DNA of 64,000 bases from Basidiobolus meristosporus CBS 931.73 (Eukaryota > Fungi > Basidiobolomycota): positions 1-64,000 of the forward strand of contig MCFE01000036.1 in NCBI GenBank assembly GCA_002104905.1, read 5' to 3'. Under the pieces are notes generated by a model that had not been told where the DNA came from, did not search any database, and saw only the letters and a list, made by a program, of their open reading frames with translations. Of this stretch, positions 1,051 to 46,432 are shown one piece after another. The stretch's first letter is position 1. Every line of letters begins with the position of its first letter. The position numbers and the translations under genes are program-made.

Positions 1051-1239
1051 TGCCTTGAAATATCTGTACCACTAACACAAATGATTACCGGCTACTATGA
1101 GATCACCTTAGCCCTTTCATGTTCAAACCACTTTGACATAATTTTCACACTCTGAACACTCCCAGCTATCCCTCTTGCTTACACAGGCTTCACATCAGCT
1201 AGCATTGGCTCCTTTAGCATGTATGTTCCATTACAATAC

Positions 1240-24992: not shown

Positions 24993-26180
24993 CTAGATGG
25001 TTATCTTTGCCTTGAGACAGGCGTTCAGATTCACGTTGGCAATCCCTATAAGCTTGGCATTGGCTATCAATGTGGAACATCCGGACTTGTTCGACAACGG
25101 TGGCGAATATGGGCCGGAATTCCTAGCACCAATGCAAATGTTGGCGCTGACCTTGATACCTATTAATTTGACTTTGGCAACGACGTCTTGACAAGTAGGG
25201 TTGGTACCACTACCACCGCCACTATCGTAGCTAGAGCCTCCGGTAGAACCACCACTGCCACTGTGGTAACCAGAACTTCCAGTAGAGCCACCACTGCCAT
25301 TGTCGCAGCCTGTGCTACCACTATTGCCGCGATCGTAGCCAGAGCCTCCAGTAGAGCCACCACTACCACTGTCGTAGTCTGTGCTGCCGTCACTGCCGCT
25401 GTCATAATTAGAACCTACAGTAGAGCCACCACTACCACTGTCGTAGCCTGCGCTACCACTACTACCGCTGTCATAACCAGAACCTCCAGTAGAGCCACCA
25501 CTACCACTGTCGTAGCCGTCACTGCCGCTGTCATAATTAGAACCTTCCGTAGAGCCACCACTACCATTGTCATAGCTAGAATTTCCACTAGAACCGCTGC
25601 TGCCATTATCATAACTGGTACTGTTGCCACTAACACTAACACTGCCATAGCCAGTGCTTCCAATAGAGCCACCACTGCCGCTGTCGTAGCCAGAACCTCC
25701 AGTAGAGCCACTGCTACCGCTGTCATAGCCAGAGCCACCGATAGAGCCACCACTGCCGCTGTCGTAACTAGAGCCTCCGCTAGAGCTACTGCTACCAATA
25801 TTATAGCTTGTACCGCTGTCATATCCGCCACTATTATCAAAGCTAGTATTGCTGCTGCTTCCACCTCCTGTAGAGGTACTATTATATTGACTTCCAGTTC
25901 CAGCTGTAGTGCATATTTCGGGATTTACTTCGATACATATTGCTTTTGCTGCTCGCACCAGATCATTGCAGCTTAATTTGTTAACATCCTTGTACTTGGA
26001 TGGTACCGATTTGGAATTCCCAGTGCATACGTTTGATTGGAGACCAGCACCCAATGTGTTCAATTTGGCTACCAGGCAATCACAATAATCGGTAGATCCA
26101 CTTCCACCTGAGCCATACATAGGAGCGGCAGCCACCTGGGAGATGATAGTAAGACAGAGAAGCGAGAATGAGAGCTTCAT
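24993..26180 (-). CDS. Secreted Cys-module repeat protein A1 (395 aa): 2 modules + Gly/Ser/Tyr/Asp 13-aa repeats + 2 modules
   Basis: Signal peptide MKLSFSLLCLTIISQVAAA from ATG 26180. Core repeats of 'YDSGSGGSTGGSG'. C-x18-C modules at both ends. Confidence 0.85.
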   Translation of the reverse strand: MKLSFSLLCLTIISQVAAAPMYGSGGSGSTDYCDCLVAKLNTLGAGLQSNVCTGNSKSVPSKYKDVNKLSCNDLVRAAKAICIEVNPEICTTAGTGSQYNSTSTGGGSSSNTSFDNSGGYDSGTSYNIGSSSSSGGSSYDSGSGGSIGGSGYDSGSSGSTGGSGYDSGSGGSIGSTGYGSVSVSGNSTSYDNGSSGSSGNSSYDNGSGGSTEGSNYDSGSDGYDSGSGGSTGGSGYDSGSSGSAGYDSGSGGSTVGSNYDSGSDGSTDYDSGSGGSTGGSGYDRGNSGSTGCDNGSGGSTGSSGYHSGSGGSTGGSSYDSGGGSGTNPTCQDVVAKVKLIGIKVSANICIGARNSGPYSPPLSNKSGCSTLIANAKLIGIANVNLNACLKAKITI

Positions 26181-27312
26181 ATTTTGGATGAACATCAATG
26201 CAAGTAAGTGAGAGAGGATGTGGATAACAGTCAGTGTTGTGTTGTCTTTTATATCCATTTCAACTGAAATGCGGTCTAGCAGCAATGTATTCCCCATAGA
26301 AGCGGGAAATTAAACGGTGTACTTGGGGTGCAGTTAGTGATGATTTACTCTACGGCGAGAATCTTTAGCCTAAGCTAAGTCAGAACTGAATAACGGGACC
26401 ACGGGCCGGATCAAGTGCCGTTGAGTCCATGTTTATATTCGGCCACTGGACTAGCCAATAGGAAACTAGTTATAAGGGGTTGTGTGAAAGGAATAGGTCT
26501 AAAATATAATTAGAATGTCGCTCGTGAAATATTGTTTGGGAGTAGCATGTTCATTCAGTTGAATACAAATCGTATTTTATCTCGAAAAGTGTCAAATGAA
26601 CTTCCTGGTGAATCGCTAAGAATATGATTTTAGTTGGCTTGGTATTTTACGCTAACCAAATGCATGCTATAAATCATTATTTGTATGGGCTCATTTATCA
26701 CAATTGACCTGGGTTCAGGATAGTGGAGCATTCACATTTATTTGCCGATCCAATTTCCAGGAGTACCTAATCTTTGATACCCCATTGCGGCTTTAATTAT
26801 AGCTCGCATTAGACCACTAGCTGATTTTCAAAGATCTATTTGTATTTATTCCTAGCAGATTGGCTTGCTGGGATTCAAATCTAACTAAACACATGACAGG
26901 AGGAGGGTAGATGGTACATAGCAGTTTTAACCATCCCAGATACTTCTTGTATTGCTGGTGCTGCACTCAAGTATGAAACGGAGTAATACAAACCATCCGG
27001 TAAGTGCATCTTGCCTCAGTCCTATGACTTGTATGTCACAAAATGCACCTAGAGGAAAGCCTGATTAGCATTCTTGAACTTGACCATCGTAGGGTGGACT
27101 CATATTAATTACCGGGCAAAGAATAGTTTATTTGCCAAAGTATATATAATCCAGTTACATGATGCTTTGGTCACCACGGGTCTCCAAAAAATATAGAAAA
27201 GAATAGACCGGATGGCTAGTGTCGATCCATGTATCGACCTATTAGAATATGGCGGTAATGGGATTGTTCTTCACTTACATCAAGCATTGTCTCCGCTATG
27301 CAATACGAAGGT

Positions 27313-28245
27313 TTAAATGGTGATATTTGCCTTGAGGCAGACCGTCAAACTAACATTGGTGATCCCTATTAGCTTGGCATTGGCAATCAAAGTGGGACAT
27401 CCAGGCTTGTTCGACAACACTGCTGCATGTGGGTCAGAATTTTTAGCTTTTGTACAAAGACCAGCGTTGACCTTTACGCCTAGTGATTTGATTTTAGCAA
27501 GAACATCCTGACAGGTAGGGTTGCCGTTACTACTGTTTTGACCGTCGTTGCTTCCATTATAGCTGCCATTTCCCGAAGAACCTCCAGATGTGCCATCTGT
27601 TGTATTGCCATTGTAGGGGTTAACTGTGGGCGAAGGTCTAGCATATGAGTCGTCGAGAGGTGTAGGGCTGATGTAAGAATCCGCTGGTGGTGTAGGACTA
27701 GTGTATGAGTCTACTGGGGGTGTGGGGTTGTCGTGCAAATCTGCCTGAGATGTGGGACTATTGTGGGAGTCAACTGGGGTTGTAAGGCTATGATGTGAAT
27801 CAGCTGATGGTGTAGGATTGACGTATGAGTCATCCGGAGTTGTAGGGCTTGGGTATGAGTCTAAAGAAGGTGTAGGGCTGGCATAGGAGTCAACTGGGGT
27901 TGTAGGGCTAGCGTAAGAGTCTTCGGGAGATGTGGAACCTGGGTGCGTATCTTCGTGACCTCCACCATTGTGAGTGCATAATCCAGCCTTTACTTTGATG
28001 TCCAATGCCGTTGCAGCTAACACTAAGTCATTGCAACTAAGTTTGGTAACATCCTTGTACTTGGGTGGTGCCGGTTTGGAATTCTTGGCGCACACCTTTA
28101 TGTTCAGACCTGCCCCCAATGCGTTCAGTTGGGTTACCAACCCATCACAATAGCTGGTCGTTCCACTTCTGCCTGGCTCATAGATAGGAGCAGCAACTAC
28201 CTGAGAGATGACGGCAAGAGAAAGCAGCGATGTTGAAAGCTTCAT
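27313..28245 (-). CDS. Secreted Cys-module repeat protein A2 (310 aa): Ser/Thr/Pro 10-aa repeats (DSYxSPTxPx)
   Basis: Signal peptide MKLSTSLLSLAVISQVVAA, four C-x18/19-C modules and a 30-bp repeat core. Confidence 0.85.
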   Translation of the reverse strand: MKLSTSLLSLAVISQVVAAPIYEPGRSGTTSYCDGLVTQLNALGAGLNIKVCAKNSKPAPPKYKDVTKLSCNDLVLAATALDIKVKAGLCTHNGGGHEDTHPGSTSPEDSYASPTTPVDSYASPTPSLDSYPSPTTPDDSYVNPTPSADSHHSLTTPVDSHNSPTSQADLHDNPTPPVDSYTSPTPPADSYISPTPLDDSYARPSPTVNPYNGNTTDGTSGGSSGNGSYNGSNDGQNSSNGNPTCQDVLAKIKSLGVKVNAGLCTKAKNSDPHAAVLSNKPGCPTLIANAKLIGITNVSLTVCLKANITI

Positions 28246-29058: not shown

Positions 29059-29754
29059 TTATACATTGACCTTTGCCTTGAGACAGGCAGCCAAGTCCAC
29101 ATTGACAATTCCCAGAAGCTTGGCATTGGCCACCAAAGTTGGGCATCCACTTTTGCCTGATAACACTGGAGCATGGGAGCCATGTTTATTGGCACTCGTA
29201 CATACACCGGCATCAACCTTGATACCAAGCAGCTTGACTTTGGCAAGAATGTCTTGACAAGTAGGGCTTGACCCAGTTCCACCTTAGCCACCATTGCTGT
29301 CGTATGGCTCGGCTGGAGGGGAAGGGCCGGAGTAAGGATCTCTCGGAGGCGGAGGATTGGCGTATGGATCCTGTGGCGGTGTAGGGTCGGCATACGGATC
29401 ATTTGGTGGTGCAGGGTTGCCGTATGGATCTTCTGGCGGTGTAGGATTTGTATGGGAGCTTCCTTGGCCTCTATCATCAGCTGTACACAGTCCAGCCTTT
29501 ACTTTGATGCCCAATGCTTGCGCAGCTACTACCAGATCATTGCAGCTCAACTTGGCAATGTCTTTGTACTTGGGTGGTGCTGGCTCGGACTTCCCAGTGC
29601 ACACCTTTGCATTGAGTCCAGCACCCAGTGCATTCAGTTGGACTACCAGCCCATCGCAATAGCTAGCGGATCCGCTTCCGCCTGACCCATAGATAGGAGC
29701 CGCAGCCACCTGAGAGACGATGGCAAGAGAAAGCAGCGATGTTGAAAGCTTCAT
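29059..29754 (-). pseudogene. Cys-module protein A3 with premature TAA (29284-29286); the frame continues to the normal stop at 29059
   Basis: Reads GGC TAA GGT where paralogues have GGC CAA GGT (Gln). The 75 downstream codons remain in frame and intact. Confidence 0.85.
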
Positions 29755-30484: not shown

Positions 30485-31210
30485 CTATACATTTACCTTT
30501 GCTTTGAGGCAGGCAGCCAAGCTCACATTGACAATTCCCAGCAGCTTGGCATTGGCCACCAAAGTTGGGCATCCACTTTTGCCTGATAACACTGGAGCAT
30601 GGGAGCCATGTTTATTGGCACTCGTACATACACCGGCATCAACCTTGATACCAAGCAGCTTGACTTTGGCAAGAATGTCTTGACAAGTAGGACTTGACCC
30701 AGTTCCACCTTGGCCGCCATTGCTGTCGTATGGGTCGACAGGAGTCTCGGGGCTAGTGTATGGTTCAACTGGAGGGGAAGGGTTGGAGTAAGGATCTCTC
30801 GGAGGCGGAGGATTGACGTATGGATCCTTTGGCGGTGTGGGGTCGGCATACGGATCATTTGGTGGTGCAGGGTTGCCGTATGGATCCTTTGGCGGTGTAG
30901 GATTTGTATGGGAGCTTCCTTGGCCTCTATCATCAGCTGTACACAGTCCAGCCTTTACTTTGATGCCCAATGCTTGCGCAGCTACTACCAGATCATTGCA
31001 GCTCAACTTGGCAATGTCTTTGTACTTGGGTGGTGCTGGCTCGGACTTCCCAGTGCACACCTTTGCATCGAGTCCAGCACCCAGTGCATTCAGTTGGACT
31101 ACCAGCCCATCGCAATAGCTAGCGGATCCACTTCCGCCTGACCCATAGGTAGGAGCCGCAGCCACCTGAGAGGCGATGGAAAGAAAAAGCAGTGATGTTG
31201 AAAGCTTCAT
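30485..31210 (-). CDS. Secreted Cys-module repeat protein A4 (241 aa): Pro-rich DPYxNPxPP repeats
   Basis: ATG 31210 gives a signal peptide, 8 Cys in four modules, and a 10-aa repeat core. Confidence 0.85.
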   Translation of the reverse strand: MKLSTSLLFLSIASQVAAAPTYGSGGSGSASYCDGLVVQLNALGAGLDAKVCTGKSEPAPPKYKDIAKLSCNDLVVAAQALGIKVKAGLCTADDRGQGSSHTNPTPPKDPYGNPAPPNDPYADPTPPKDPYVNPPPPRDPYSNPSPPVEPYTSPETPVDPYDSNGGQGGTGSSPTCQDILAKVKLLGIKVDAGVCTSANKHGSHAPVLSGKSGCPTLVANAKLLGIVNVSLAACLKAKVNV

Positions 31211-32019: not shown

Positions 32020-32715
32020 CTATACATTGACCTTTGCCTTGAGACAGGCAGCCAAGTCCACATTGACAATTCCCAGAAGCTTGGCATTGGCCACCAAAGT
32101 TGGGCATCCACTTTTGCCTGATAACACTGGAGCATGGGAGCCATGTTTATTGGCACTCGCACATACACCGGCATCAACCTTGATACCAAGCAGCTTGACT
32201 TTGGCAAGAACGTCTTGACAAGTAGGACTTGACCCAGTTCCACCTTGGCCGCCATTGCTGTCGTATGGGCCGACAGGAGTCTTGGGGCTAGTGTATGGCT
32301 CGACTGGAGGGGAAGAGCCGGAGTAAGGATCTTTCGGAGGCGGAGGATTGGCGTATGGATCCTGTGGCGGTGTAGGGTCGGCATACGGATCATTTGGTGG
32401 TGTGGGATCTGTATAGGAGCTTCCTTGACCTCTATCATCAGTTGTACACAGTCCAGCCTTTACTTTGATGCCCAATGCCTGCACAGCTACTACCATTTCG
32501 TTACAGCTCAACTTGGCAACGTCTCTGTACTTGGGTGGTGCCGGCTCAGACTTTCCAGTGCACACCTTTGCATTGAGTCCAGCACCCAATGCATTCAGTT
32601 GGACTACCAGCCCATCGCAATAGCTAGCGGATCCACTTCCGCCTGAAGCGTAGATAGGAGCCGCAGTCGCCTGAGAAATGATCGCGAGTGAGAGTGCTGA
32701 GAATGAAAGCTTCAT
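32020..32715 (-). CDS. Secreted Cys-module repeat protein A5 (231 aa)
   Basis: Same layout as A4. TATATAA at 32793-32787 on the minus strand. Confidence 0.85.
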   Translation of the reverse strand: MKLSFSALSLAIISQATAAPIYASGGSGSASYCDGLVVQLNALGAGLNAKVCTGKSEPAPPKYRDVAKLSCNEMVVAVQALGIKVKAGLCTTDDRGQGSSYTDPTPPNDPYADPTPPQDPYANPPPPKDPYSGSSPPVEPYTSPKTPVGPYDSNGGQGGTGSSPTCQDVLAKVKLLGIKVDAGVCASANKHGSHAPVLSGKSGCPTLVANAKLLGIVNVDLAACLKAKVNV

Positions 32716-32786
32716 ATTGTGAATGGGCAGGCCAGCAAGTGAGCAACTTGATTAAGGATGAGAGTAGTTGCTGGTGACCAATGAGC

Positions 32787-32793
32787 TTATATA
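32787..32793 (-). promoter_or_regulatory. TATA box ~75 nt upstream of A5; equivalent elements lie upstream of A2, A3, A4, A6 and A7
   Basis: Minus strand reads gcagcTATATAAgctc. A4 and A7 also have TATATAA, while A2, A3 and A6 have TATTTAA at the homologous position. Confidence 0.5.
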
Positions 32794-34522
32794 GCTGCGC
32801 AACTCGATGTCTGTCTCGCTCTAATTTTTAGCTCATGCTGAGGTGAACCCGCATGGCAAATGTCGAGCACGGATGACAGTTTCAAATGACCGGATACATT
32901 ATGTTAGATTGCTCAGTGATCCCCTAGCAATTAAACAGCTATCCCCCATGCATCATTGTTTGTATTGTACCCAAGAAGTAATGATTAGGACTTGATTAAT
33001 CTAGATCTGATCTGCACGGATTCATTGCCATTTCACTAACCCAAATAGAGTGAGCGGCATCTGCACACCAGTAAACTAGTGTTCACAATCATTCATTACG
33101 ATCGGGGAAAGAGCTATTACGCTAATGCATCTACGTAGAGTTCTTCAATCCTAACGTGTACACTCATACCCACCCCTTGAACACAATTTGGAAGAAGTTT
33201 GCCAGGGGGCTATGAGCTAGTGAGCCCACAATGCAACGAATTATGACCACACACCGAGTGCTTTGCTATCCCTGATATACCTACCGAGTGTTTTCGTTAC
33301 AATACTAACTCCATAAATCTTGTCACTTGCTTCCACTATGTCAAGGTCAATGTTTCATCAAACCTTGAGATATCCATTGAAGAGGTAGATTTGTTTTCTT
33401 GTGATTAGCTCTCGAGATGTCAGCAAACAAATAGCATTGCCTTGACTTCTGTGATGATAGTTGAGGCGTATTACTTGACCCACTGTGGAGATGACACATT
33501 CGGATATTCAAGCCACAGAGATCACTTTGAAATTGATGATAATTTGCGAAATATTTGAATCGCGGTTATTTCTCAACTATACAATTATAGTGTTATTGTG
33601 GCCTGCTATCATATACCAGCCAGATTAGTAAATAAACGTGGTATGTAACATCCTGTGACTCTGGATTAGATTGCGATCTTGACTTGAATTAGATAGCAAA
33701 TCTTTTCAAAAGATATATTCAGCTTTGCCGTGATTACAATAGACCCCATTATTGGGATTATTATCACTGCTCTTAAATGTTAAAACGATTCTTCGAAACC
33801 ACCCATCGACGCATACATAGCACCATTAAACATGAATGTCAATAGGACACTAATCAAAATGACCAAAATAAAATTCAATTTATTGGTCGAAGCATATATA
33901 ATTCTGCTATATGCTACTACGGCCTTCACAAATCATTCATTTATAAGCAGCAAAGATTAGATCCAACTAATTCGAGATTTGCAATATGCAAGCACTCGGA
34001 ATCGCCGAGTGATGGTAACGGACTTTACCCTACTTGATTTTTTCTTTTCGCCTGAATCATACTGAATTCAACAGCCCTTAGATAGAAATGCTAAAATAGA
34101 GGCCAATAGACTCAATGTATACTAGGCGTTTATTTTGAGTGACGAGCCTGCTTTGCAAACATACTATCTTTTTTGTGAACCCTCCCGGTAGTTTACAACT
34201 CGGCAACTTGAAGAAATTATCGAGCAGATTAGCATTCATTTTATTTGACCAAAATAATTAGATATTTGCGAAGGCATTGTTGATAAAGTAGACTGCTTAG
34301 AGAGCAGCAATGGTACAAATAGTATGATTATTCAATAAGCGTGGTGCGGTGTTTACTAGCCAAGTGTAATAAAATCCGAATGTTTTCGCTGAGTTCCTAT
34401 AGGAATGTCACCAGGACATTGAATTCTAGGAAAGTATGCTGTTGGGGTTGAAGTACGCATAATCGGGTATCATGACAAATCGAAAGGATAAACTTGCAAG
34501 AGATGAATGAACCGGCCCCTCC

Positions 34523-35242
34523 CTATACATTGACCTTTGCCTTAAGGCAGGCAGCCAAGTCCACATTGACAATTCCCAGAAGCTTGGCATTGGCCACCAG
34601 AGTTGGACATCCACTTTTGCCTGATAACACTGGAGCATGGGAGCCATGTTTATTGGCACTCGCACATACACCGGCATCAACCTTGATACCAAGCAGCTTG
34701 ACTTTGGCAAGAACGTCTTGACAAGTAGGACTTGACCCAGTTCCACCTTGGCCGCCATTGCTGTCGTATGGGTCGACAGGAGTCTCGGGGCTAGTGTATG
34801 GTTCAACTGGAGGGGAAGGGCCGGAGTAAGGATCCTTCGGAGGCGGAGCATTGGCATACGGATCCTTTGGCGGTGTAGGGTTGGCATACGAATCATTTGG
34901 TGGTGCAGGGCTGGCATGTGGATCCTCAGGTTGTGTGGGATTTGTATAGGAGCCTTCTTTATCATTAGCTTTGCACAGCCCAGCATTTACGTTGATGCCC
35001 AATGCCTGTACGGCTACTACCAGATTATTGCAGCTCAACTTGTCAGCATCTTTATATTTGGATGGTGCCGATTCGGACTTTCCAGTGCACACCTTTGCAT
35101 TGAGTCCAGCTCCCAGTGCATTCAGTTGGACTACTAGCCCATCACAATAGCTGATCGATCCATTTCCGCCTGATCCATAGATAGGAGCGGCAGCCACCTG
35201 AGAAATAACGGCAAGTAAGAGCACTGGGAATGAAATTTTCAT
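34523..35242 (-). CDS. Secreted Cys-module repeat protein A6 (239 aa)
   Basis: Signal peptide MKISFPVLLLAVISQVAAA, four modules and a Pro/Tyr core. Confidence 0.85.
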   Translation of the reverse strand: MKISFPVLLLAVISQVAAAPIYGSGGNGSISYCDGLVVQLNALGAGLNAKVCTGKSESAPSKYKDADKLSCNNLVVAVQALGINVNAGLCKANDKEGSYTNPTQPEDPHASPAPPNDSYANPTPPKDPYANAPPPKDPYSGPSPPVEPYTSPETPVDPYDSNGGQGGTGSSPTCQDVLAKVKLLGIKVDAGVCASANKHGSHAPVLSGKSGCPTLVANAKLLGIVNVDLAACLKAKVNV

Positions 35243-35968: not shown

Positions 35969-36664
35969 CTATATATTTACCTTTGCTTTGAGGCAGGCAG
36001 CCAAGCTCACATTGACAATTCCCAGAAGCTTGGCATTGGCCACCAGAGTTGGACATCCACTTTTGCCTGATAACACTGGAGCATGGGAGCCATGTTTATT
36101 GGCACTCGCACATACACCGGCATCAACCTTGATACCAAGCAGCTTGACTTTGGCAAGAACGTCTTGACAAGTAGGACTTGACCCGGTTCCACCTTGGCCG
36201 CCATTGCTGTCGTATGGGTCGACAGGAGTCTCGGGGCTAGTGTATGGTTCAACTGGAGGGGAAGGGCCGGAGTAAGGATCTTTCGGAGGCGGCGGATTGG
36301 CGTATGGATCTTTTGGTGGTGCGGGGTCGGCATACGGATCATTTGGTGGTGTGGGATCTGTATAGGAGCTTCCTTGACCTCTATCATCAGTTGTACACAG
36401 TCCAGCCTTTACTTTGATGCCCAATGCCTGCGCAGCTACTACCAGATCATTGCAGCTCAACTTTCCAACATCCTTGTACTTGGGCGGTGCCGGTTCAGAC
36501 TTTCCAGTGCACACCTTTGCATTGAGTCCAGCACCCAATGCATTCAGTTGGACTACCAGCCCATCGCAATAGCTAGCGGATCCACTTCCGCCTGAAGCGT
36601 AGATAGGAGCCGCAGTCGCCTGAGAAATGATCGCGAGTGAGAGTACTGAGAATGAAAGCTTCAT
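35969..36664 (-). CDS. Secreted Cys-module repeat protein A7 (231 aa)
   Basis: ATG 36664. Near-identical to A5. Confidence 0.85.
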   Translation of the reverse strand: MKLSFSVLSLAIISQATAAPIYASGGSGSASYCDGLVVQLNALGAGLNAKVCTGKSEPAPPKYKDVGKLSCNDLVVAAQALGIKVKAGLCTTDDRGQGSSYTDPTPPNDPYADPAPPKDPYANPPPPKDPYSGPSPPVEPYTSPETPVDPYDSNGGQGGTGSSPTCQDVLAKVKLLGIKVDAGVCASANKHGSHAPVLSGKSGCPTLVANAKLLGIVNVSLAACLKAKVNI

Positions 36665-38695
36665 ATTGTGAATGGGCAGGCCAGCAAGTGAGCAACTTGA
36701 TTGAGGATGAGAGTAGTTGCTGGTGACCAATGAGCTTATATAGCTGCGCAACTCGATGTCTGTCTCGCTCTAATTTTTAGCTCATGCTGAGGTGAACCCG
36801 CATGGCAAATGTCGAGCACGGATGACAGTTTCAAATGACCGGATACATTATGTTAGATTGCTCAGTGGTCCCCTAGCAATTAAACAGTTATCCCCCATGG
36901 ATCATTGTTTGTATTGTACCCAAGAAGTAATGATTAGGACTTGATTAATCTAGATCTGATCTGCACGGATTCATTGCCATTTCACTAACTCAGATAGGGC
37001 GTGCGGGACGAGTACCGGTCAATTGGGGTTACTTCGATTAGCACATGCACTTCATTTTGTATGGTTGATTTTACTAGTGTAGGTCTTGGTACCCTCTGAC
37101 ACTTGGTAAATTTCAAACTATTTACAAAGGTGTATAAACATTTAGACATTGTCTTGAATCGCATCGGGTTAAATGAAGTTCAATCACAATTCGTGCTTTG
37201 TAATGTGCTATATGGATGAGTGAAAGCCATTCGAAACCATGGTACTGAAATACATGATGTAGCCTTTTAAGCTTACCACTCTATCGCGATAGCCAAAGTA
37301 TTTGTCCAATATAAGGTGTCAATTCAGTTATTTCGTGTGACATGGTATGATATAGTAGTGACTGCTTCGAAGCGAGCGCCAAGATGAACCAAACCGAATT
37401 TGCAGGGGGTCTTTGCTTTGAAGTTCTGATTAGCCGCGATGTTTACCAGTTTCTATTGATATTTTTATGACTTGTACAGGGCCTAACAATACTGGTAATC
37501 GTCATTGTGAAACTATTCAACCATTCTAGACGTCATTATAGTAAAGCAAGTAACCTACTCTGGTAGCGACGAGAATGATAATGTAACTATGAACGTAGGA
37601 AAATGTTGTTCGAAAAAAATATCATCATCATCGTTTTCTGATTCATGATCATGTTCAGGAGATAGGATATAGTGAATGTATTGGAAGAACAAGTAGAGCG
37701 GTAGATCGTAATCTTACCATATGTTACTAAGCTGCTTGCCACAAGGTTTACAACTAACTTCGGGTTGAGAATCACTGGAAGCCGATGACTAACTAATAAC
37801 ATGAAGCAGCCAACTTTACAGAATAGCAGCGGAGTGTTTGTATAGTAATATAAATCGCGCGATAGCAAGTGTGTAGCATATTGGCTCTGTCTTAACCTCA
37901 ATGAAATGTACCATCAGACCAGTGAATAAAGCACTATATACTGGCTAAAGGTCATCCAACCCAGTTACGTGCCACTTCGACTTCCGCAAATCCGCCTTCT
38001 TTAATCTTGCACAATCAAAAACTGAGAAAAGAAGAAACAGTAGCTGCATTTCAGCACGGTGTCAGATCATAATGATTAGACCATATTACTCCCAACATTC
38101 TAATTTTCCAGCATATGGCGCACCGTGGCCTCTGAAACACATAGAAATAGCATTAATCGTTCATTGCCATTGAGGTCTATCATTGGAGGCTGATTAAGAC
38201 TTGACTGTAGGTAGTCAATTTACCCAATTTCAAGATACGCATTCTGATAGCTACTTGGTGTGGCTGCTGGTATCATTAATGTAAGAAGTGAAACGATTGT
38301 AATACATTCATTACTAGTTATCTTAGGATGCTCAAGTGCTATATGTGTGAGTGTGTGAGTGTGTACTTTACTATTGACATCCCCCAGGAGATCTTTACTC
38401 ACCGAGCTTTGGATGCTATATCCTATAATTATATCACAACGTTATCATAGTGCCACCCATGATAAAAATTCTTGTTACTTTTGTCTGCACTTTCCGTATG
38501 TTGGATAATTAATCAAGTAAATGGCTCAATGCGGTTCATTGATGAAGTCAAATAAAACATGTGAATGTCTCTAGAACATCACTAATTCAGGGAAATCATG
38601 CTATCTGAATATGAATATTCGACACACAAGTGATCAACCCCCCCAAAGAGAATGAACAACACAATGACCTAGTATTTGACACAACAATGGCATTC

Positions 38696-39939
38696 TTAGA
38701 TATCGATCTTTGCCTTGAGACAGGCTGCCAAATCCTGAACTGTGGGCGATTTGGTGCTATCTCATTTGTAAGTAACCACTGAGTCTATAAATAAAATGGA
38801 TTGACAAGCTACACGGCCAATATCTCAAATGCTGCTGTGGTGTGATTCACCTCGCTCTTGATATGTAATGAATATCTTCTCTAATTGTTGCACAATGAAC
38901 CTCGTCTAACCCATTTCACTTTTTATGATTTAGTAAAATATTCAACAGCATTTTCTTATCAAGAATTGGGATATTTCCAAATAAGAGAACGGCTGTAAAT
39001 AGAGATCTGCGCACATTACAGAGTACGTCAAGAGAATTACTGGTCAGACAACGATAGCAGTTGTTCCTATTGGTGCTCTATAGACCAACAATGTGCTGTC
39101 ATTTTGCTTGTTCCCGAACGCTAGAGCATCTAGACTTGTATAAGAGTGTCGGAGCGTGCGAAGCTTTGTACATGGCACTAATACATAGGCTGGCATCGGC
39201 CTCGACCCCGCGTAATTTGCCCTTTGATTGAACATTTTGACAGAGCGAGCTCCCGTCACTTCCGGTTTGGCCTCCACCACCGCCACCATAATCACAATTT
39301 GTCGAGGCACCGCCTGATGAACCATCATTGTTATCATGATATCGAGTATTGCTACCAGAACCATCACCACCCTCATCTCCGGTGTGACTTGGGCCGGTGC
39401 TGCTCCCGTAATCTGATGAGCCATTTTTGCAACTATCCTCAGGAGGTGTAGGAGCTTTCTGGGGGTGAAAAGTTGGTCTGTGAACTTTACCTATTAACTC
39501 CAGCCTTTACTTTTATCTCGATATCCCATAAGGCCATTACAGCCCAACTTTGAAACATCCTTATACTTTGTACACATATCCTCATTTCCACTTTGGCCTC
39601 TAGTATTACCGTTGTGATCGCTATCTCCTGGAGTACCATCGGATATACCACCATTTGATACACCATTAATGTAACCATTTGCTGAAGGCCTAGGATTGGT
39701 ATATGAAGCTGTTGATGAAGGTTTGATTTTCGCGTAACGCTGTTCTTAGCTATCAAATGGACATCGCTGAAAATTCAATTCAACACCCAGTGCTCGTGTA
39801 GCTACTAAAAGGTGTAATAGTTCAACTTTGCAGCATCATTGTATATGCGGATAGGAGATTTGTTTCCATCTGAATCACAGATAAGAGCGGCAGCTATCAT
39901 TGCAATAATGTTAAGCAAGTGCACTGAGAATAGAAACAT
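38696..39939 (-). pseudogene. Decayed Cys-module family member A8, with its last module split by a ~350-bp insertion
   Basis: Fragments 'KYKDVSKLGCNGL..IKVKAG' and 'LCQNVQSKGKLRGVEADASLC...HAPTL', plus a detached 'DLAACLKAKIDI*' at 38735-38696. Contains frameshifts. Confidence 0.7.
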
Positions 39940-40673
39940 CACATTGGAATGAATTAGATGATGCGGATCTTTCGTTCGCTCATTAATTTCTGCTTTACCT
40001 CTATTTTAATTGCAATCTGCCAACTTATAACATTATACTCCCTGGACATTCAGCGTTTCATTGGCAAGTGGATACATAGTTCAAATAGGTTCGATAAAGC
40101 AATGTGGTCTCTACCAATCCACCATTGGAAGTCAATAGATCAACACTGGCGCTCTCATTGTATGTTTCTATATTCATTGAAGCTTAGCCTATATTGTATT
40201 TTCAATCATATTCTCCATGTGGGATTCAGTGGCTATCTCCGATCCATTCTTCCTGGCTTCTTACTAACTCTGCAATGTCACTTACGAGTGTAGTCACCTA
40301 TTGAGTCTGTTGTCGAATACTTGTCCATAACTTTAGTGCCCAGTTCCAAGTACTGGGCTTACTGGTGCTCTTACCGCGATATCCACCACATCAACAACCA
40401 TCCATCCAACTATACTACGCATTGTGAAGTTTGACATGGTTGTTGTACTTGACCGTGTGGGTGAAAAGTGAGGATGAGTTTATTCAGATTAAATATCCAT
40501 AAATTACTAGACTGTGCGGTGGTTTGTATCCTGCATACTCGCTCAAAATCTGGAAAGAGTGGGTGAATGACGTGGGGTGTGCTGAACATTCGTATTAGTC
40601 GCCGTTTGGAGCAGTAGGAATAGTCGGAATTGTGATAGCAGTAATAGTGGCAGTAGTAGTAATAGTGGGGTAG

Positions 40674-42095
40674 TTAGAGTGCCAGTGCTGCTCTCCTGGC
40701 AATGCTACGTCCACCAACTCCCAGGTTTACTCGAGCTTTCAAGCAAAGCTCCACATTGACATCAGCGATGCCCAGCAGCTTGGCATTCGCAACCAGTGTG
40801 GGACATCCTGGGGCATTCGATAACACAGGAGCCCTAGGGCCAGCATTTGGGCCTCTGAGACAGATGTTGGCATCCACCTTGATTCCGAGAAGTCGGACTT
40901 TGGCACTGATGTCCTGGCATGTTGGGCGGGATCCGTTGCCATTGTTTCCTGCATTGCCACCCCCATTTCCACCGCCGTGGTGACCACTACCACCGCCACC
41001 ACCGCCAACGCAAACATCCACTCCGATAAGTCTGGTAACATCGACATTGGCACCAATTGCACAGCCTCCGTTGCCGGAACTTCCATTACCACCACCGCCA
41101 TTGCCACCACCACCACCACCACCGTGACTACTACCTCCACCACCACCACCACCACCTAGACAGATCTCAGCCTTCACAGGGATTCCAAGCAGTTTCAAGT
41201 CGGCTACCAAGTCAGGACAAGTGTTTCCACCTTTGAGTGGAGGATGGGAGTTTCCTCCATTTCCACCGTTGCCGCCACCGCCGCCACCTCCACCACCACC
41301 TCCTAGGCAAATCTTGGCATCAATCTTGATTCCGAGAGCCTGGAGTTTTGCCACAATTCCATCACAAGTGCGTGGTTTCCCGCCTCCACCGCCGCCCCCA
41401 TTACCACTACCACCTGAGCCTCCGTGGGAACCGCCACCACCATTTTGTCCTCCATTTCCTCCACCACCATTATGCCCTCCGTAGCCATCATCTCCGGTGT
41501 GACCTCCTTTACTGCCGCTACCTCCACCACCACTATATCCACCGCCTCCGGTGTGCCCTCCATTACTGCCTTTTCCTGAACCACCATTGTAGCTACCACT
41601 TCCGTTGTGGCCTCCATTACTACCGCTGCCTGAGCCTCCATTGTAGCTGCCACCACCGGTGTGTTCTCCATTTCCTCCTCCACCATTTCGTCCTCCGTAG
41701 CTATCATCTCCGGTGTGACCTCCTTTACCGCCGTTGCTACCACCACCCCCGTTATGTCCTCCATTCCCGCCACCACCATTGTACCCACCTCGCCCTGTGT
41801 GGCCTCCGCCTCTGCTGCTTGCACAAAGTCCGGCCTTCACCTTGATCCCTAGAGCTTCGACTGCCACCACCAACCCATCACAGTCCAGTGACTCCACTGG
41901 TCCATACCTGGAGCGTGAGGGAGCTGACTTGCCCGTGCACACTTTTGCATTTATGTTGGCTCCGAGTGCGTTCAATCGAACAATCAATCCATCACAGTAT
42001 CCGTCAGATCCGCCACCCCCGCTCGAGCCATAGTAAGGCACAGCAGCAATCTGGGAGACCATGGCGAGCGAGAGAAGGGCATATGGAAGCTTCAT
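40674..42095 (-). CDS. Secreted Gly-rich Cys-module protein B1 (473 aa, 7 modules); chimera of B3-like 5' and B2-like 3' halves
   Basis: Signal peptide MKLPYALLSLAMVSQIAA, Gly/His/Asn-rich linkers and 14 Cys. Confidence 0.88.
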   Translation of the reverse strand: MKLPYALLSLAMVSQIAAVPYYGSSGGGGSDGYCDGLIVRLNALGANINAKVCTGKSAPSRSRYGPVESLDCDGLVVAVEALGIKVKAGLCASSRGGGHTGRGGYNGGGGNGGHNGGGGSNGGKGGHTGDDSYGGRNGGGGNGEHTGGGSYNGGSGSGSNGGHNGSGSYNGGSGKGSNGGHTGGGGYSGGGGSGSKGGHTGDDGYGGHNGGGGNGGQNGGGGSHGGSGGSGNGGGGGGGKPRTCDGIVAKLQALGIKIDAKICLGGGGGGGGGGGNGGNGGNSHPPLKGGNTCPDLVADLKLLGIPVKAEICLGGGGGGGGSSHGGGGGGGNGGGGNGSSGNGGCAIGANVDVTRLIGVDVCVGGGGGGSGHHGGGNGGGNAGNNGNGSRPTCQDISAKVRLLGIKVDANICLRGPNAGPRAPVLSNAPGCPTLVANAKLLGIADVNVELCLKARVNLGVGGRSIARRAALAL

Positions 42096-43103
42096 TTTGA
42101 GTAGTTTTCTGACAGCAAGCGAGTGACTAGGCTAGACCTGACTTGACTTGACTTGATTTGCTTTGCTATGATACGGCTTGGCTTGATGTGACTCGGTTTA
42201 GCTTTGCTTTGCTTAGTTCAGCTTGATATATATAGGGTTGGGGATGATGTTGTTGTTGTTGTTGATGACGATGTGTTGGAGAGCGGACAGTAGGCTTTAA
42301 GTACTCTTGCAAGCAAACAGATGGCCGAATTTCAGACGATTCTTTTTGCATCTGTGAAAGTAAGTGTATGAATAGAAAGATGGATATGCGCGAAGAGTAC
42401 GGAGTGCATCATATAAACCGGTTTATCAAAGAGAATGCCATTAACTGAAGATGAATTTATCAATTAGTGGTGAGTTTGGAATCATCAACCATGTAGTAAG
42501 GCCAATTTCACCAGTATTATGATACTGAATGCACGACTGAGGAAGTAACTTAATTCATCACAATGAACTTAGACCCAAGATTGGTTGCACATTGGACAGT
42601 GATATTGGTGAGGCGCCAACTTCCCCTATTTTCCCCTCGACGCTCGATCTATTGGTATGCGGTTTCAATTTTCTATTTCATGTATGTGCTTAGACAATTA
42701 CTGCAGTCTCAGCAATTGAGTTATTCTAGACTTGACCGTTCATTTGAACATCTTTCTTACATTGGTGCATCTTTACAGCGAACCGAAACTTCGATGGACC
42801 AACCTATGCAAATCTCTGACCTCCGCCACGCCAACCTCCATCGAAGTATAGCGGGATGCTCTCCCACCCCGCCCCCCCCCGAAGCACTTAACCTTAATGC
42901 TCGGACAATTCCCAGCCAATCACTCTGACCAATCTCCATGGAAACCAATTTGGTGTACTCCGATGCAGTATGTATTGAGTTAATACATTTTGCATTTCCA
43001 CGCCTCCCTGGATTCATACAAGCTATAAATCGCCCAGCTGGGTCCTCTCGATTGTACAAGTCAATCCGGTGCGAGTACACTCCATATTTCTTAACATCTC
43101 AAG

Positions 43104-44303
43104 ATGAAACTCATTGCCTCAAAAACGCTTCTTCTATTCGCCGCCGTACAGGCCATAGCTGCCTTACCGGGCTACGGGTCGGGTGGAGGCCAACATAACA
43201 GCTATTGCGATGGATTGATCGTCCGACTGAACGCTCTGGGAGCAAATCTGGATGCCAAGGTCTGCTTGGGCAACTCTGGCAAATCGAGATATACTGCCGA
43301 TGAGATCACTCGTTTAAGTTGCGATGGCTTGGTAGTTGCTGCCAAAGCCTTAGGAATCAAAGTGAGAGCTGGCCTTTGCGTGAATGGTGGTCACGATGGT
43401 AGCGGCAACAGTGGCTATAATGGTGGCGGAAATGGTGGGCACAATGGCGGTGGTAATGGCGGTGGTAACGGCGGTCACAATGGCGGTGGTAACGGCGGTC
43501 ACAATGGCGGCGGTAACGGCGGTCACAATGGCGGCGGTAACGGCGGTCACAATGGCGGTGGTAATGGCGGTGGTAACGGCGGTCACAATGGCGGCGGTAA
43601 TGGTGGTGGTAGGCCTGACACTTGTAATGGGATTGTGGCAAAACTCCAGGCTCTCGGAATCAAGATTGATGCCAAGATTTGCCTAGGAGGTGGTGGTGGC
43701 GGTGGCGGCAACGGTGGAAATGGAGGAAACTCCCATCCTCCACTCAAAGGTGGAAACACTTGTCCTGACTTGGTAGCCGACTTGAAACTGCTTGGAATCC
43801 CTGTGAAGGCTGAGATCTGTCTAGGTGGTGGTGGTGGAGGTGGAGGTAGTAGCCACGGTGGTGGTGGTGGTGGCAATGGCGGTGGTGGTAATGGAAGTTC
43901 CGGCAACGGAGGCTGTGCAATTGGTGCCAATGTCGATGTTACCAGACTTATCGGAGTGGATCTTTGCGTTGGCGGTGGTGGCGGTGGTAGTGGTCACCAC
44001 GGCGGTGGAAATGGGGGTGGCAATGCAGGAAACAATGGCAACGGATCCCGCCCAACATGCCAGGACATCAGTGCCAAAGTCCGACTTCTCGGAATCAAGG
44101 TGGATGCCAACATCTGTCTCAGAGGCCCAAATGCTGGCCCTAGGGCTCCTGTGTTGTCAAATGCCCCAGGATGTCCCACACTGGTTGCGAATGCCAAGCT
44201 GCTGGGCATCGCTGATGTCAATGTGGAGCTTTGCTTGAAAGCTCGAGTAAACCTGGGAGTTGGTGGACGTAGCATTGCCAGGAGAGCAGCACTGGCACTC
44301 TAA
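43104..44303 (+). CDS. Secreted Gly-rich Cys-module protein B2 (399 aa, 7 modules; GGHNGGGN repeats)
   Basis: Signal peptide MKLIASKTLLLFAAVQAIAA, a 24-bp tandem repeat at ~43410-43610, and TATAAA at ~43024. Confidence 0.88.
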   Translation: MKLIASKTLLLFAAVQAIAALPGYGSGGGQHNSYCDGLIVRLNALGANLDAKVCLGNSGKSRYTADEITRLSCDGLVVAAKALGIKVRAGLCVNGGHDGSGNSGYNGGGNGGHNGGGNGGGNGGHNGGGNGGHNGGGNGGHNGGGNGGHNGGGNGGGNGGHNGGGNGGGRPDTCNGIVAKLQALGIKIDAKICLGGGGGGGGNGGNGGNSHPPLKGGNTCPDLVADLKLLGIPVKAEICLGGGGGGGGSSHGGGGGGNGGGGNGSSGNGGCAIGANVDVTRLIGVDLCVGGGGGGSGHHGGGNGGGNAGNNGNGSRPTCQDISAKVRLLGIKVDANICLRGPNAGPRAPVLSNAPGCPTLVANAKLLGIADVNVELCLKARVNLGVGGRSIARRAALAL

Positions 44304-45211
44304 CTACCCCACTATTACTGCTATCACAATTCCGACTATTCCTACTGCTCCAAACGGCGACTAATACGAATGTTCAGCACACCCAACGTCATTCACCCAC
44401 TCTTTCCAGATTTTGAGCGAGTATGCAGGATACAAATCACCGCACAGTCTAGTAATTTATGGATATTTAATCTGAATAAACTCATCCTCACTTTTCACCC
44501 ACACGGTCAAGTGCAACAACCATGTCAAACTTCACAATGCGTAGTATGGTTGGATGGATGGTTGTTGATATGGTGGATATCGCGGTAAGAGCACCAGTAA
44601 GCCCAGTACTTGGAACTGGGCACTAAATCTATGGGCAGGCGCTCTACAACAGATGGAACAAGCGGCTAAGAGTGCGCTCAACATGCCAGAGTTAGTAAGA
44701 AGCCAGGGAGAATGGATCGGAGATAACCGCTGAATCCCACATGGAGAATATGATCGAAGACGCAATCCAGGCTAAACCTTGATAGATCCAGAAACACCCA
44801 AAGTGGGCGCGCATAATTCCAATCTGGCCTTAATCAGATCTTAATTGATGCAGTCAGCTAAATCTATCTACACCCAATGCATCCTCATTGATGAACAGGT
44901 TATCCGCTGCACTCCATACTCTCAGTACCTCTCAATCCCTCTGCTCATACACCTACTTGCGCCAAACCAAATATACCACCTTTAATTTGAGCATTTGTTT
45001 GCTCGCAAGAGTACTTAAAGCCTACTGTCCGCTCCCCAACACATCGTCATCAACAACAACAACATCATCCCCAACCCTATATATATCAAGCTTGACTAAG
45101 CCAAGCAAAGCTAAACCGAGTCACATCAAGCCAAGCCGTATCATAGCAAATCAAGTCAAGTCAAGCCAGGTCTAGCCTAGTCACTCGCTTGCTGTCAGAA
45201 AACCACTCAAA

Positions 45212-46432
45212 ATGAAGCTTCCATACGCCCTTCTCTCGCTCGCCATGGTCTCCCAGATTGCTGCTGTGCCTTACTATGGCTCGAGCGGGGGTGGCGGATC
45301 TGACGGATACTGTGATGGATTGATTGTTCGATTGAACGCACTCGGAGCCAACATAAATGCAAAAGTGTGCACGGGCAAGTCAGCTCCCTCACGCTCCAGG
45401 TATGGACCAGTGGAGTCACTGGACTGTGATGGGTTGGTGGTGGCAGTCGAGGCTCTAGGGATCAAGGTGAAGGCCGGACTTTGTGCAAGCAGCGGAGGCG
45501 GAGGCCACACAGGGCGAGGTGGGTACAATGGTGGTGGCGGGAATGGAGGACATAACGGGGGTGGTGGTAGAAACGGCGGTAAAGAAGGTCACACCGGAGA
45601 TGATAGCTACGGAGGACGTAATGGTGGAGGAGGCAATGGAGGACACACCGGTGGCGGCGGCTACAATGGAGGTGGTGGTAAAGGGGGCGGCATGATAGAT
45701 GGTAGCTACGGAGGGCATACCGGTGGGGGAGGAAAAGGAGGACACAATGGTAGTGGAAGTTACAACGGAGGCTCAGGCAGCGATAGTAAAGAAAATGGCT
45801 ACAATGGTGGTGGTGGCAACGGAGGTGGCGGTAACGGAGGTGGTGGCAACGGAGGTGGTGGCAATGGAGGCGGTGGCAATGGAGGCGGTGGCAATGGAGG
45901 CGGTGGCAATGGAGGCGGTGGAGGGAGATCAAGCACTTGCAATGGAATTGTAGCAAAACTCCAGGCTCTTGGCATAGAGATAGATACCAATATATGTTTA
46001 GGCGGTGGTGTCAGCGGAGGTAATGGAGGAAACCCTCACCCTCCACTCAAAGGCGGAAACACTTGTCCAGGATTGGTTGCCGACTTGAAACTGCTTGGAA
46101 TCCCTGTGAAAGCTGAGATCTGTCTTGGTCGTGGCGGAGGTAGTCACAACGGCGGTGGAAATGGAGGAAACAATGGCAATGGGTCCCGCCCAACATGCCA
46201 GGACATCAGTGCCAAAGTCCGACTTCTCGGAATCAAGGTGGATGCCAACATCTGTCTCAGAGGCCCAAATGCTGGCCCTAGGGCTCCTGTGTTGTCGAAT
46301 GCCCCAGGATGTCCCACACTGGTTGCGAATGCCAAGCTACTAGGTATTGCTGATGTGAGTGTAGAGCTTTGCTTGAAAGCTCGAGTAAACCTGGGAGTTG
46401 GTGGACGTAGCATTGCCCGGAGAGGACTATAA
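45212..46432 (+). CDS. Secreted Gly-rich Cys-module protein B3 (406 aa, 6 modules; GGGGN repeats)
   Basis: Signal peptide identical to B1, a 15-bp tandem repeat at ~45800-45920, and TATATATAT at 45078-45086. Confidence 0.88.
   Translation: MKLPYALLSLAMVSQIAAVPYYGSSGGGGSDGYCDGLIVRLNALGANINAKVCTGKSAPSRSRYGPVESLDCDGLVVAVEALGIKVKAGLCASSGGGGHTGRGGYNGGGGNGGHNGGGGRNGGKEGHTGDDSYGGRNGGGGNGGHTGGGGYNGGGGKGGGMIDGSYGGHTGGGGKGGHNGSGSYNGGSGSDSKENGYNGGGGNGGGGNGGGGNGGGGNGGGGNGGGGNGGGGNGGGGGRSSTCNGIVAKLQALGIEIDTNICLGGGVSGGNGGNPHPPLKGGNTCPGLVADLKLLGIPVKAEICLGRGGGSHNGGGNGGNNGNGSRPTCQDISAKVRLLGIKVDANICLRGPNAGPRAPVLSNAPGCPTLVANAKLLGIADVSVELCLKARVNLGVGGRSIARRGL

What the first reader, a model, noticed from the sequence alone, without database searches (positions are those of the whole stretch)
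24993..46432. Array of 11 secreted proteins built from a repeated C-x18-C 'LG-turn' module: candidate undescribed fungal structural/adhesive protein system
Every member has a signal peptide and repeats of a ~20-aa module such as CDGLVVQLNALGAGLNAKVC, CNDLVVAAQALGIKVKAGLC, CQDVLAKVKLLGIKVDAGVC or CPTLVANAKLLGIVNVDLAAC. Modules come in pairs separated by 18 aa, so the N- and C-terminal caps are homologous two-module units. A-type proteins have 4 modules (8 Cys); B-types have 6-7. The hydrophobic alternation around (A/L)LG suggests disulfide-stapled amphipathic hairpins. Conserved terminal domains around a repetitive core is the layout of self-assembling biomaterials such as spidroins and byssal proteins, and loosely of plant hybrid Pro/Gly-rich wall proteins. 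There are no CC doublets, so these are not hydrophobins. I cannot assign the module to any family I know. A role in spore or hyphal surface coats or adhesive is inference.
Basis: partly seen in the sequence, partly recalled or inferred. Interest (0 to 1): 0.88.

Follow-up and report, generated by a model that had tools for sequence, protein, structure and literature searches.

The report
Basidiobolus-only secreted cysteine-module protein array
A 21-kb stretch of the fungus Basidiobolus meristosporus holds a tandem array of genes for exported proteins with a previously undescribed, disulfide-stapled 60-residue cap at each end and a fast-changing repetitive middle; the family is real and found only in this genus, but its role as a surface or matrix material is still inference.

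Summary
Window 24993-46432 (B. meristosporus CBS 931.73, contig MCFE01000036.1) carries 11 loci of one family. Nine are intact, one has an in-frame stop (g3), and one is a decayed pseudogene (g8).

Each intact gene is an uninterrupted ORF that encodes:
- a signal-peptide-like N-terminus;
- a two-module cap, C-x18-C-x18-C-x18/19-C, at each end;
- a low-complexity core made of in-frame DNA tandem repeats.

The N- and C-caps are homologous (hhalign 97%, E 1e-10). They are under purifying selection (dN/dS about 0.1-0.3).

No Pfam family, solved-structure sequence or solved fold matches the cap. An HMM search of 1.84 billion proteins found true relatives only in B. meristosporus and B. ranarum. The unit is therefore an undescribed, genus-restricted domain. 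It is not a hydrophobin: there are no CC doublets and no Pfam hit, and the UniProt "Hydrophobin" names on paralogues are unsupported.

My best reading is "sticker-and-spacer" proteins. Basic, hydrophobic caps would act as stickers and disordered acidic Pro/Asp/Tyr or Gly/Asn/His cores as spacers, building a wall, spore-surface or mucilage network. That function is inferred. No expression data could be obtained.

This scan already found the same family on other DNA of this genome (s1-209635), with the same conclusion.

The parts
24993..26180 (-). g1: intact member with a Ser/Gly/Tyr/Asp-rich core (33% S, 32% G, 18 Tyr). It has 12 Cys: the 8 canonical ones plus extras in the signal peptide, the N-cap (2) and the core.
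   Evidence: core is made of tandem repeats of period 39/69/78
27313..28245 (-). g2: intact A-type member, 310 aa, 8 Cys, with a Ser/Pro/Thr/Asp core of roughly 10-residue 'SPTPxxDSY'-like repeats.
29060..29754 (-). g3: A-type copy with an in-frame TAA at 29284-29286 (CAA in the paralogues). As it stands it encodes 156 aa: signal peptide, N-cap and core. The C-cap still reads in frame after the stop.
   Evidence: annotated as a 156-aa product
30485..31210 (-). g4: intact A-type member, 241 aa, 8 Cys, with a Pro/Asp/Tyr decapeptide core.
32020..32715 (-). g5: intact A-type member, 231 aa. N-cap at 32440-32625, C-cap at 32038-32226. The C-cap unit was modelled with AF2.
34523..35242 (-). g6: intact A-type member, 239 aa, 8 Cys.
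35969..36664 (-). g7: intact A-type member, 231 aa, 8 Cys.
38699..39850 (-). g8: decayed pseudogene. Cap and core remnants are spread over several frames, with stops and lost cysteines.
40674..42095 (-). g9: intact B-type member, 473 aa, 14 Cys (7 modules), core 48% Gly with His, Asn and Tyr. It is a chimera: the 5' half resembles g11 and the 3' half resembles g10.
43104..44303 (+). g10: intact B-type member, 399 aa, 14 Cys, with a GGHNGGGNGG-type core and a short basic C-terminal tail.
45212..46432 (+). g11: intact B-type member, 406 aa, 12 Cys (6 modules). It lacks the lone 16-residue module.

Best explanation
The array encodes a Basidiobolus-specific family of exported 'sticker-and-spacer' proteins.

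Shown:
- Each gene has a signal-peptide-like N-terminus.
- Each has 20-residue modules with the consensus C-[PDNQ]-[DG]-[IL]-V-A-[RK]-L-x-[AL]-L-G-[IL]-[KN]-V-[DN]-A-x-V-C.
- The modules are paired into a conserved, basic cap of about 60 residues at each end (pI 8-9.4).
- The core is a rapidly turning-over, repeat-built, low-complexity stretch.

Inferred:
- Each module is closed by its own Cys1-Cys20 disulfide. It would form an amphipathic helix, a Gly turn and an alternating hydrophobic/polar return strand, and two modules would pack into one small domain.
- The caps, and the extra internal modules of the B-types, would associate with each other, with wall polymers or with hydrophobic surfaces.
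- The hydrated acidic Pro/Asp/Tyr cores or the Gly/Asn/His cores would act as flexible spacers, possibly cross-linkable through Tyr.
- Together the proteins would form an extracellular network, coat or mucilage on the hyphal or spore surface.
For: - Architecture and module spacing. Across the family the C-x18-C distance is fixed while linkers vary from 8 to 91 residues. Lone modules carry exactly two Cys (g9, g10, P0028). Both points favour a disulfide within each module.
- Module consensus: built from 73 modules, with G12 in 68 of 73. The second half has a beta-type hydrophobic moment of 0.87 against 0.27 for the alpha type. Module GRAVY is +0.89 against -0.43 for linkers.
- AF2 model of the unit with 54 aligned units: pLDDT 77, pTM 0.66, one helix at the start of each module.
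- The caps are homologous and under purifying selection.
- The caps are basic. The A-type cores are acidic (pI 4.1) with a Tyr about every 10 residues. The B-type cores are 46-48% Gly with 8-13 His.
- The cores are in-frame DNA tandem repeats of differing period and copy number.
- The same cap-plus-spacer design recurs with unrelated cores in other subfamilies and in B. ranarum.
- All-module and single-unit architectures also exist, so the unit is an autonomous domain.
- The nearest named neighbours in language-model feature space are hydrophobins, Eas, chaplins and spidroin. These are leads only.
Against: - I found no evidence of expression, secretion, localisation or assembly. No RNA run was listed, and the runs that hold the locus are DNA.
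- Disulfide connectivity and fold rest on a medium-confidence model built mostly from paralogous units.
- DSSP calls the 'return strand' coil, not strand.
- The feature-space scores of 0.5-0.75 are below the tool's own significance level.
- No cross-linking enzyme or wall gene lies nearby. The neighbours are Trp synthase, sirohaem synthase, Nramp, RING and SH3 proteins.
- There is no GPI-like or other wall-anchoring signal.
Confidence: 0.42

Rival explanations
1. Functional analogue of hydrophobins or chaplins. The amphipathic caps would assemble at air-water or hydrophobic interfaces. They would lower surface tension and coat the aerial conidiophores and conidia of a fungus from a lineage in which classical hydrophobins are rare.
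For: - Language-model neighbours among named families are mainly hydrophobin, Eas and chaplin clusters.
- UniProt auto-names two paralogues 'Hydrophobin'.
- The modules are hydrophobic and amphipathic.
- The A-types have eight single Cys and are 231-310 aa. That resembles the surface-active HFS family in size and Cys count, though not in Cys pattern (PMC8596622).
- The genes sit in tandem arrays, as hydrophobin genes often do (my background knowledge).
Against: - There is no homology to hydrophobins: no Pfam hit even at E 10 and no CC doublets.
- The long, highly hydrophilic cores (75-300 aa) are unlike compact surfactant proteins.
- All similarity scores are below significance.
- I did not test whether Basidiobolus lacks true hydrophobins.
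Confidence: 0.25
2. Secreted interaction proteins: effector-like, antimicrobial or bacteria- or host-directed factors of a gut-dwelling fungus. The stapled module would be a stable binding or membrane-active scaffold.
For: - The family includes small single-unit proteins of 107-125 aa in a seven-gene array.
- It is lineage-restricted, and its copy number and cores evolve fast.
- The caps are cationic and amphipathic.
- The Gly/His-rich cores recall Gly/His-rich antimicrobial peptides (my background knowledge).
Against: - The caps are under purifying selection, not diversifying selection.
- Most window members are large, with long structural-looking repeats.
- There are no processing sites that would release peptides. 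The only dibasic site is in the B-type tail.
Confidence: 0.15
3. Mostly non-functional, recently amplified orphan ORFs with no important product.
For: - Two of the 11 copies are broken.
- g1 has an odd number of Cys.
- No expression data exist.
Against: - dN/dS is 0.1-0.3 even between old paralogues with dS above 1.
- Caps and architecture are conserved between B. meristosporus and B. ranarum.
- All core repeat periods are multiples of three.
Confidence: 0.05

Closest known systems
Hydrophobins (Pfam PF01185 / PF06766)
   Same: Fungal, secreted, eight cysteines in the A-types, hydrophobic/amphipathic, encoded by multigene families. They are the nearest named neighbours in language-model feature space.
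   Different: No sequence or profile match. The Cys pattern is C-x18-C repeated, not C-CC-C-C-CC-C. The proteins are 2-4 times larger and have long hydrophilic repetitive cores. The predicted fold is helical.
Hyphosphere proteins (HFS) of Pezizomycotina (PMC8596622)
   Same: A lineage-restricted family of secreted proteins of 219-280 aa with eight single cysteines. It is a precedent for surface-active cysteine-rich families other than hydrophobins.
   Different: The HFS pattern is C-CxxxC-C-C-C-C-C. HFS proteins have no duplicated caps and no repetitive core, and they occur in a different phylum. I detected no homology, although no HFS sequence or profile was compared directly.
Plant hybrid proline-rich proteins and class II glycine-rich wall proteins
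   Same: Signal peptide, then a Pro-rich or Gly-rich repetitive domain, then a hydrophobic cysteine domain. They are extracellular matrix proteins.
   Different: The plant 8CM domain has CC and CxC and sits at one end only. Here an unrelated 4-Cys unit sits at both ends. The kingdom is also different.
Spidroins and engineered telechelic (triblock) gel-forming proteins
   Same: Conserved associative terminal domains flank a fast-evolving repetitive core.
   Different: No homology: no Spidroin Pfam hit. The proteins here are much shorter, and the caps are disulfide-stapled and homologous to each other.
Streptomyces chaplins (PF03777)
   Same: Short hydrophobic Gly/Val/Asn/Ala-rich domains bracketed by two cysteines. 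Long chaplins carry two such domains. They coat aerial hyphae.
   Different: Chaplins are bacterial and form amyloid. There is no profile match, and the resemblance is only in composition and feature space (score about 0.5).
Ankyrin repeat (local resemblance only)
   Same: The module's 'hh-x-x-L-x-x-L-G-A/I-x-h-[DN]-A-K' stretch resembles ANK helix 2 plus its GADVNAKD loop. An ANK protein (P0027) appeared as a spurious HMM hit.
   Different: No Pfam Ank hit. The modules are 20 residues long rather than 33, they are Cys-bracketed, and they are extracellular.

Membership tests
Hydrophobin (class I/II) | Eight Cys in the pattern C-CC-C-C-CC-C, with two CC doublets | tested here: not met
   No adjacent cysteines occur in any member. 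The spacings are 18/18/18 ... 18/18/19.
Hydrophobin (class I/II) | Match to Pfam PF01185 or PF06766 | tested here: not met
   No hit at E up to 1 for the window proteins. No hit at E up to 10 for the paralogues, including the auto-named 'Hydrophobin' P0017. None for any of the 54 units.
Hydrophobin (class I/II) | Self-assembly into amphipathic films at interfaces | not testable with these tools
   This needs recombinant protein and surface-tension, ThT or AFM assays.
Plant HyPRP / 8CM (LTP-like) domain | Eight-cysteine motif C-C-CC-CxC-C-C and an LTP-type Pfam match | tested here: not met
   There are no CC or CxC motifs and no Pfam hit.
CFEM (PF05730) and other fungal 8-Cys domains | Pfam profile match | tested here: not met
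   Searches returned none.
Spidroin | Spidroin N- or C-terminal domain, or MaSp repeat Pfam match | tested here: not met
   There is no Pfam hit. The only link is a 0.50 feature-space neighbour.
Chaplin (PF03777) | Chaplin domain profile match | tested here: not met
   There is no Pfam hit. The only link is a 0.52 feature-space neighbour.
Kex2-processed repeat proteins (KEPs; PMC7329392) | Repeats separated by dibasic Kex2 sites | tested here: not met
   No KR or RR lies between modules or repeats. The single RR is in the B-type C-terminal tail.
Basidiobolus C-x18-C module family (this family; also s1-209635) | Signal peptide plus one or more units C-x18-C-linker-C-x18/19-C with the helix-LG-alternating consensus | tested here: met

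The most novel reading that the evidence does not exclude
The caps are a new self-associating, disulfide-stapled fold. Basidiobolus would use it, in place of hydrophobins, to build a dedicated spore-surface material. Candidates are the adhesive droplet of capilliconidia or the elastic, Tyr-cross-linked wall of the ballistic conidiophore. The different cores (acidic Pro/Asp/Tyr, resilin-like DSYG/Gly-rich, His-rich) would tune its mechanics. That would make this a natural telechelic protein-gel system unique to one fungal genus.
Probability: 0.2. Interest if true: 0.8.

Novelty: new variant of a known kind. Interest (0 to 1): 0.55.

Why it matters
Cell-surface and spore-surface biology is almost uncharted at the molecular level in early-diverging fungi. 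Classical hydrophobins are largely a Dikarya feature. Basidiobolus is also an opportunistic pathogen, with sticky and ballistic spores.

A genus-specific, expanded family of exported proteins with a new stapled domain and material-like triblock design is a concrete candidate for what those surfaces are made of. It could also be a compact self-assembling module for protein materials.

As it stands it is one more uncharacterised lineage-specific secreted cysteine-rich family, though an unusually well-defined one.

Tried and rejected
- **Pfam.** I scanned full-length window proteins, 10 paralogues and 54 isolated units and found nothing meaningful.
- **PDB sequence and profile searches.** Nothing.
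- **AF2 of full-length g5 without an alignment.** Unusable, pLDDT 43.
- **Fold searches with the unit model.**
  - Foldseek against PDB gave a best E of 3.8.
  - VIA wide gave a best Z of 2.3.
  - The ESM Atlas shape search gave TM up to 0.52 to unrelated bacterial proteins.
  - AFDB clusters returned only a Basidiobolus paralogue.
- **Genome-contig scan.** It found nothing, but that collection holds only bacteria and archaea, so the blank is uninformative.
- **Expression.** No RNA run was listed. The runs that hold the locus cover the intergenic DNA evenly at a depth of about 240, so they are genomic. Exact-protein look-ups found only the genome contig.
- **Hydrophobin identity.** Rejected (see the membership test). 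The UniProt names 'Hydrophobin' and 'Xylose isomerase-like TIM barrel' on paralogues are unsupported auto-annotations.
- **Ankyrin relationship.** Rejected as a local resemblance.
- **GPI anchoring of the B-types.** Rejected by eye. The tail after the last Cys is 19-22 residues (LKARVNLGVGGRSIARR...) and ends in only a short hydrophobic stretch after the RR.
- **Literature.** Six searches found no paper describing the family.
Full report
**Source and context**

Exact-protein look-ups place the window on Basidiobolus meristosporus CBS 931.73, assembly GCA_002104905.1, contig MCFE01000036.1. Window coordinates equal record coordinates.

The flanking genes are ordinary:
- a fused tryptophan synthase;
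- two APH/EcKL-like kinases;
- an Nramp transporter at 46632-47828;
- sirohaem synthase;
- RING, SH3 and GET4 proteins.

None of them suggests a linked pathway.

**Observation**

ORF listing and translation show uninterrupted ORFs for nine intact paralogues:

| Gene | Coordinates | Strand |
|---|---|---|
| g1 | 24993-26180 | - |
| g2 | 27313-28245 | - |
| g4 | 30485-31210 | - |
| g5 | 32020-32715 | - |
| g6 | 34523-35242 | - |
| g7 | 35969-36664 | - |
| g9 | 40674-42095 | - |
| g10 | 43104-44303 | + |
| g11 | 45212-46432 | + |

Two further copies are broken:
- g3 (29060-29754, minus strand) is a full-length copy with one in-frame TAA at 29284-29286, where its paralogues have CAA.
- g8 (about 38699-39850, minus strand) is a decayed pseudogene with frameshifts, stops and lost cysteines.

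A tblastn search with the cap unit finds no copies elsewhere in the window.

Every intact protein starts with MK, a hydrophobic run and AAA/AxA followed by P. This looks like a signal peptide by inspection, but I ran no predictor. The layout then continues as follows:
- a conserved PxYGSGG leader;
- a unit C-x18-C-x18-C-x18-C;
- a low-complexity core;
- a unit C-x18-C-x18-C-x19-C, a few residues before the stop.

Cysteine counts:
- The A-types g2-g7 have 8 Cys (g3 only when read through its stop).
- The B-types g9 and g10 have 14, from an extra internal pair with a 26-residue linker plus a lone C-x16-C module.
- g11 has 12.
- g1 has 12, one of them in the signal peptide.
- There are no CC doublets.

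**Is it real and selected?**

- N- and C-caps are homologous. Profile-profile comparison gives probability 97%, E 1.2e-10, over 60 aligned columns.
- N-caps of A- and B-types are 55-82% identical to each other but only 21-26% identical to C-caps. B. ranarum has orthologues of both caps. The two-cap architecture therefore predates both the A/B split and the divergence of the two species.
- Nei-Gojobori dN/dS on the caps is about 0.1-0.3 for nearly all pairs, including old pairs with dS above 1.
- The cores are DNA-level tandem repeats whose periods are all multiples of three: 15, 21, 24, 27, 30, 36, 39, 48, 54, 60, 69, 78 and 108. They differ in type and copy number between paralogues.
- The array grew by multi-gene segmental duplications. 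For example, 28580-31291 matches 34045-36745 at 88%.

**The module**

Seventy-three distinct modules from the family give this consensus: C-[PDNQ]-[DG]-[IL]-V-A-[RK]-L-x-[AL]-L-G-[IL]-[KN]-V-[DN]-A-x-V-C.
- Gly12 occurs in 68 of 73 modules.
- Residues 13-19 alternate hydrophobic and polar. The hydrophobic moment is 0.87 at 170 degrees against 0.27 at 100 degrees.
- Residues 4, 5, 8 and 11 follow a helical spacing.
- Module GRAVY is +0.89. Linker GRAVY is -0.43.

Across all family members the C-x18-C distance is fixed, while linkers range from 8 to 91 residues. Isolated modules carry exactly two cysteines. The most economical inference is one disulfide per module.

AF2 on the g5 C-cap unit, with an alignment of 54 units, gave pLDDT 77 and pTM 0.66. 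It placed a 10-residue helix at the start of each module and two short helices. The single-sequence model of the whole protein was useless.

**Relatives**

- No Pfam family matches the window proteins, ten paralogues or any of the 54 units.
- There is no PDB sequence or profile hit.
- There is no structural match:
  - Foldseek against PDB gave a best E of 3.8.
  - VIA wide gave a best Z of 2.3, where unrelated models typically reach 7-8.
  - The Atlas shape hits are unrelated.
- The only AFDB cluster hit is a Basidiobolus paralogue.

An HMM of the unit, read against 1.84 billion representative proteins, found 25 hits at E up to 1e-3. Twenty-two are true. I checked the sources of all those not encoded in the window itself, and they are all B. 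meristosporus or B. ranarum. Three are repeat-driven artefacts, including an ankyrin-repeat protein whose helix-2/GADVNAKD loop locally resembles the module. A profile search of the 5.8-billion-cluster database added only B. ranarum fragments.

Other architectures in the family:
- all-module proteins with up to seven units (P0008);
- single-unit proteins of 107-125 aa, in a seven-gene tandem array on another contig (L001);
- cap-core-cap proteins with unrelated cores (P0017, P0023, P0012).

The unit is therefore an autonomous domain, and the cap-plus-spacer design has been reused.

**Function**

Nothing here measures function. These properties are shown:
- The caps are basic (net +1 to +5, pI 7.9-9.4) and rich in hydrophobic residues.
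- The A-type cores are acidic (pI 4.1), 27-29% Pro, with a Tyr roughly every ten residues in DPY/DSY contexts.
- The g1 core is Ser/Gly/Tyr/Asp.
- The B-type cores are 46-48% Gly with Asn, 8-13 His and some DSYGG motifs.
- There are no Kex2-type sites between repeats and no GPI-like tail.

Language-model feature searches put hydrophobins, Eas, chaplins and a spidroin cluster among the nearest named families. This held for the whole protein, for the N-cap alone and for a single-unit paralogue. The scores were only 0.5-0.75, which the tool itself rates as leads.

My committed reading is that these are multivalent sticker-and-spacer proteins forming an extracellular network or coat on the wall, the spore surface or mucilage. 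A hydrophobin-like interfacial role is the main rival, and an interaction or antimicrobial role is a lesser one.

I could get no expression evidence. No RNA run was listed. The two runs that hold the locus cover intergenic DNA evenly and are genomic.

**Comparison and novelty**

The family fails every tested defining feature of these groups (see the membership test):
- hydrophobins;
- plant 8CM/HyPRPs;
- CFEM;
- spidroins;
- chaplins;
- Kex2-processed repeat proteins.

The HFS family of Pezizomycotina is a useful precedent for a lineage-restricted, surface-active '8 single Cys' family, but its Cys pattern differs (PMC8596622). No paper I could find describes this family.

It was followed up with the same conclusion: genus-specific, no known family or fold, probably helical (s1-209635). 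My tests were run before I saw that note, and they agree with it.

**Verdict**

This is a real, well-defined, undescribed and genus-restricted secreted domain family in a large tandem array. The material, adhesive or coat interpretation is reasonable but untested.

Noticed in passing
window 40149-46144: g9 is a chimera. Its 5' half plus upstream region matches g11's 5' half plus upstream region, inverted (41139-42459 vs 44859-46144, 82%). Its 3' half plus downstream region matches g10's (40149-41402 vs 43587-44810, 92%). Cap dS agrees: the g9-g11 N-caps give 0.02 and the g9-g10 C-caps give 0.04. Unequal crossing-over between g10 and g11 followed by an inversion would explain this without a circular intermediate (compare s1-206187).
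   Followed up: partly
L001 2748-11614 (MCFE01000067.1): A second tandem array lies on another contig: seven small genes (107-125 aa), the 107-aa copies of which (P0022 cluster) each encode one two-module unit of the same family. P0031 and P0032 (582 and 509 aa, all-module) sit on the same 122-kb contig and have consecutive accession numbers, so they are probably adjacent.
   Followed up: partly
paralogues P0017, P0009 and AFDB A0A1Y1Y8H1: Public automatic names for family members are 'Hydrophobin' and 'Xylose isomerase-like TIM barrel domain-containing protein'. No Pfam hit or Cys pattern supports them, and they look like mis-annotations.
   Followed up: yes
window 46632-47828 (-): An Nramp metal transporter gene lies directly beside the His/Gly-rich B-type genes. 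This is probably coincidence.
   Followed up: no
window 1-2740 (+): ORFs with reverse-transcriptase-like motifs (for example LFADDF) sit at the window start. They suggest a degraded non-LTR retroelement.
   Followed up: no
window 10392-11768 and 16370-17908 (+): Two closely related APH/EcKL-type kinase-like paralogues flank the fused tryptophan synthase gene (13243-15171).
   Followed up: no
window 24993-26180 (g1): g1 carries four non-canonical cysteines: one in the signal peptide, two in the N-cap where the paralogues have Gly, and one in the core. This leaves an odd number (11) in the mature protein. Its N-cap dN/dS is somewhat higher (0.24-0.40). The cause could be relaxed constraint, or a free thiol for intermolecular bonding.
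   Followed up: no
P0027 (ankyrin-repeat protein, spurious HMM hit): The first 15 residues of the module resemble ankyrin helix 2 plus the GADVNAKD loop. That is enough to pull an ANK protein into the HMM results through 11 weak stretches.
   Followed up: partly
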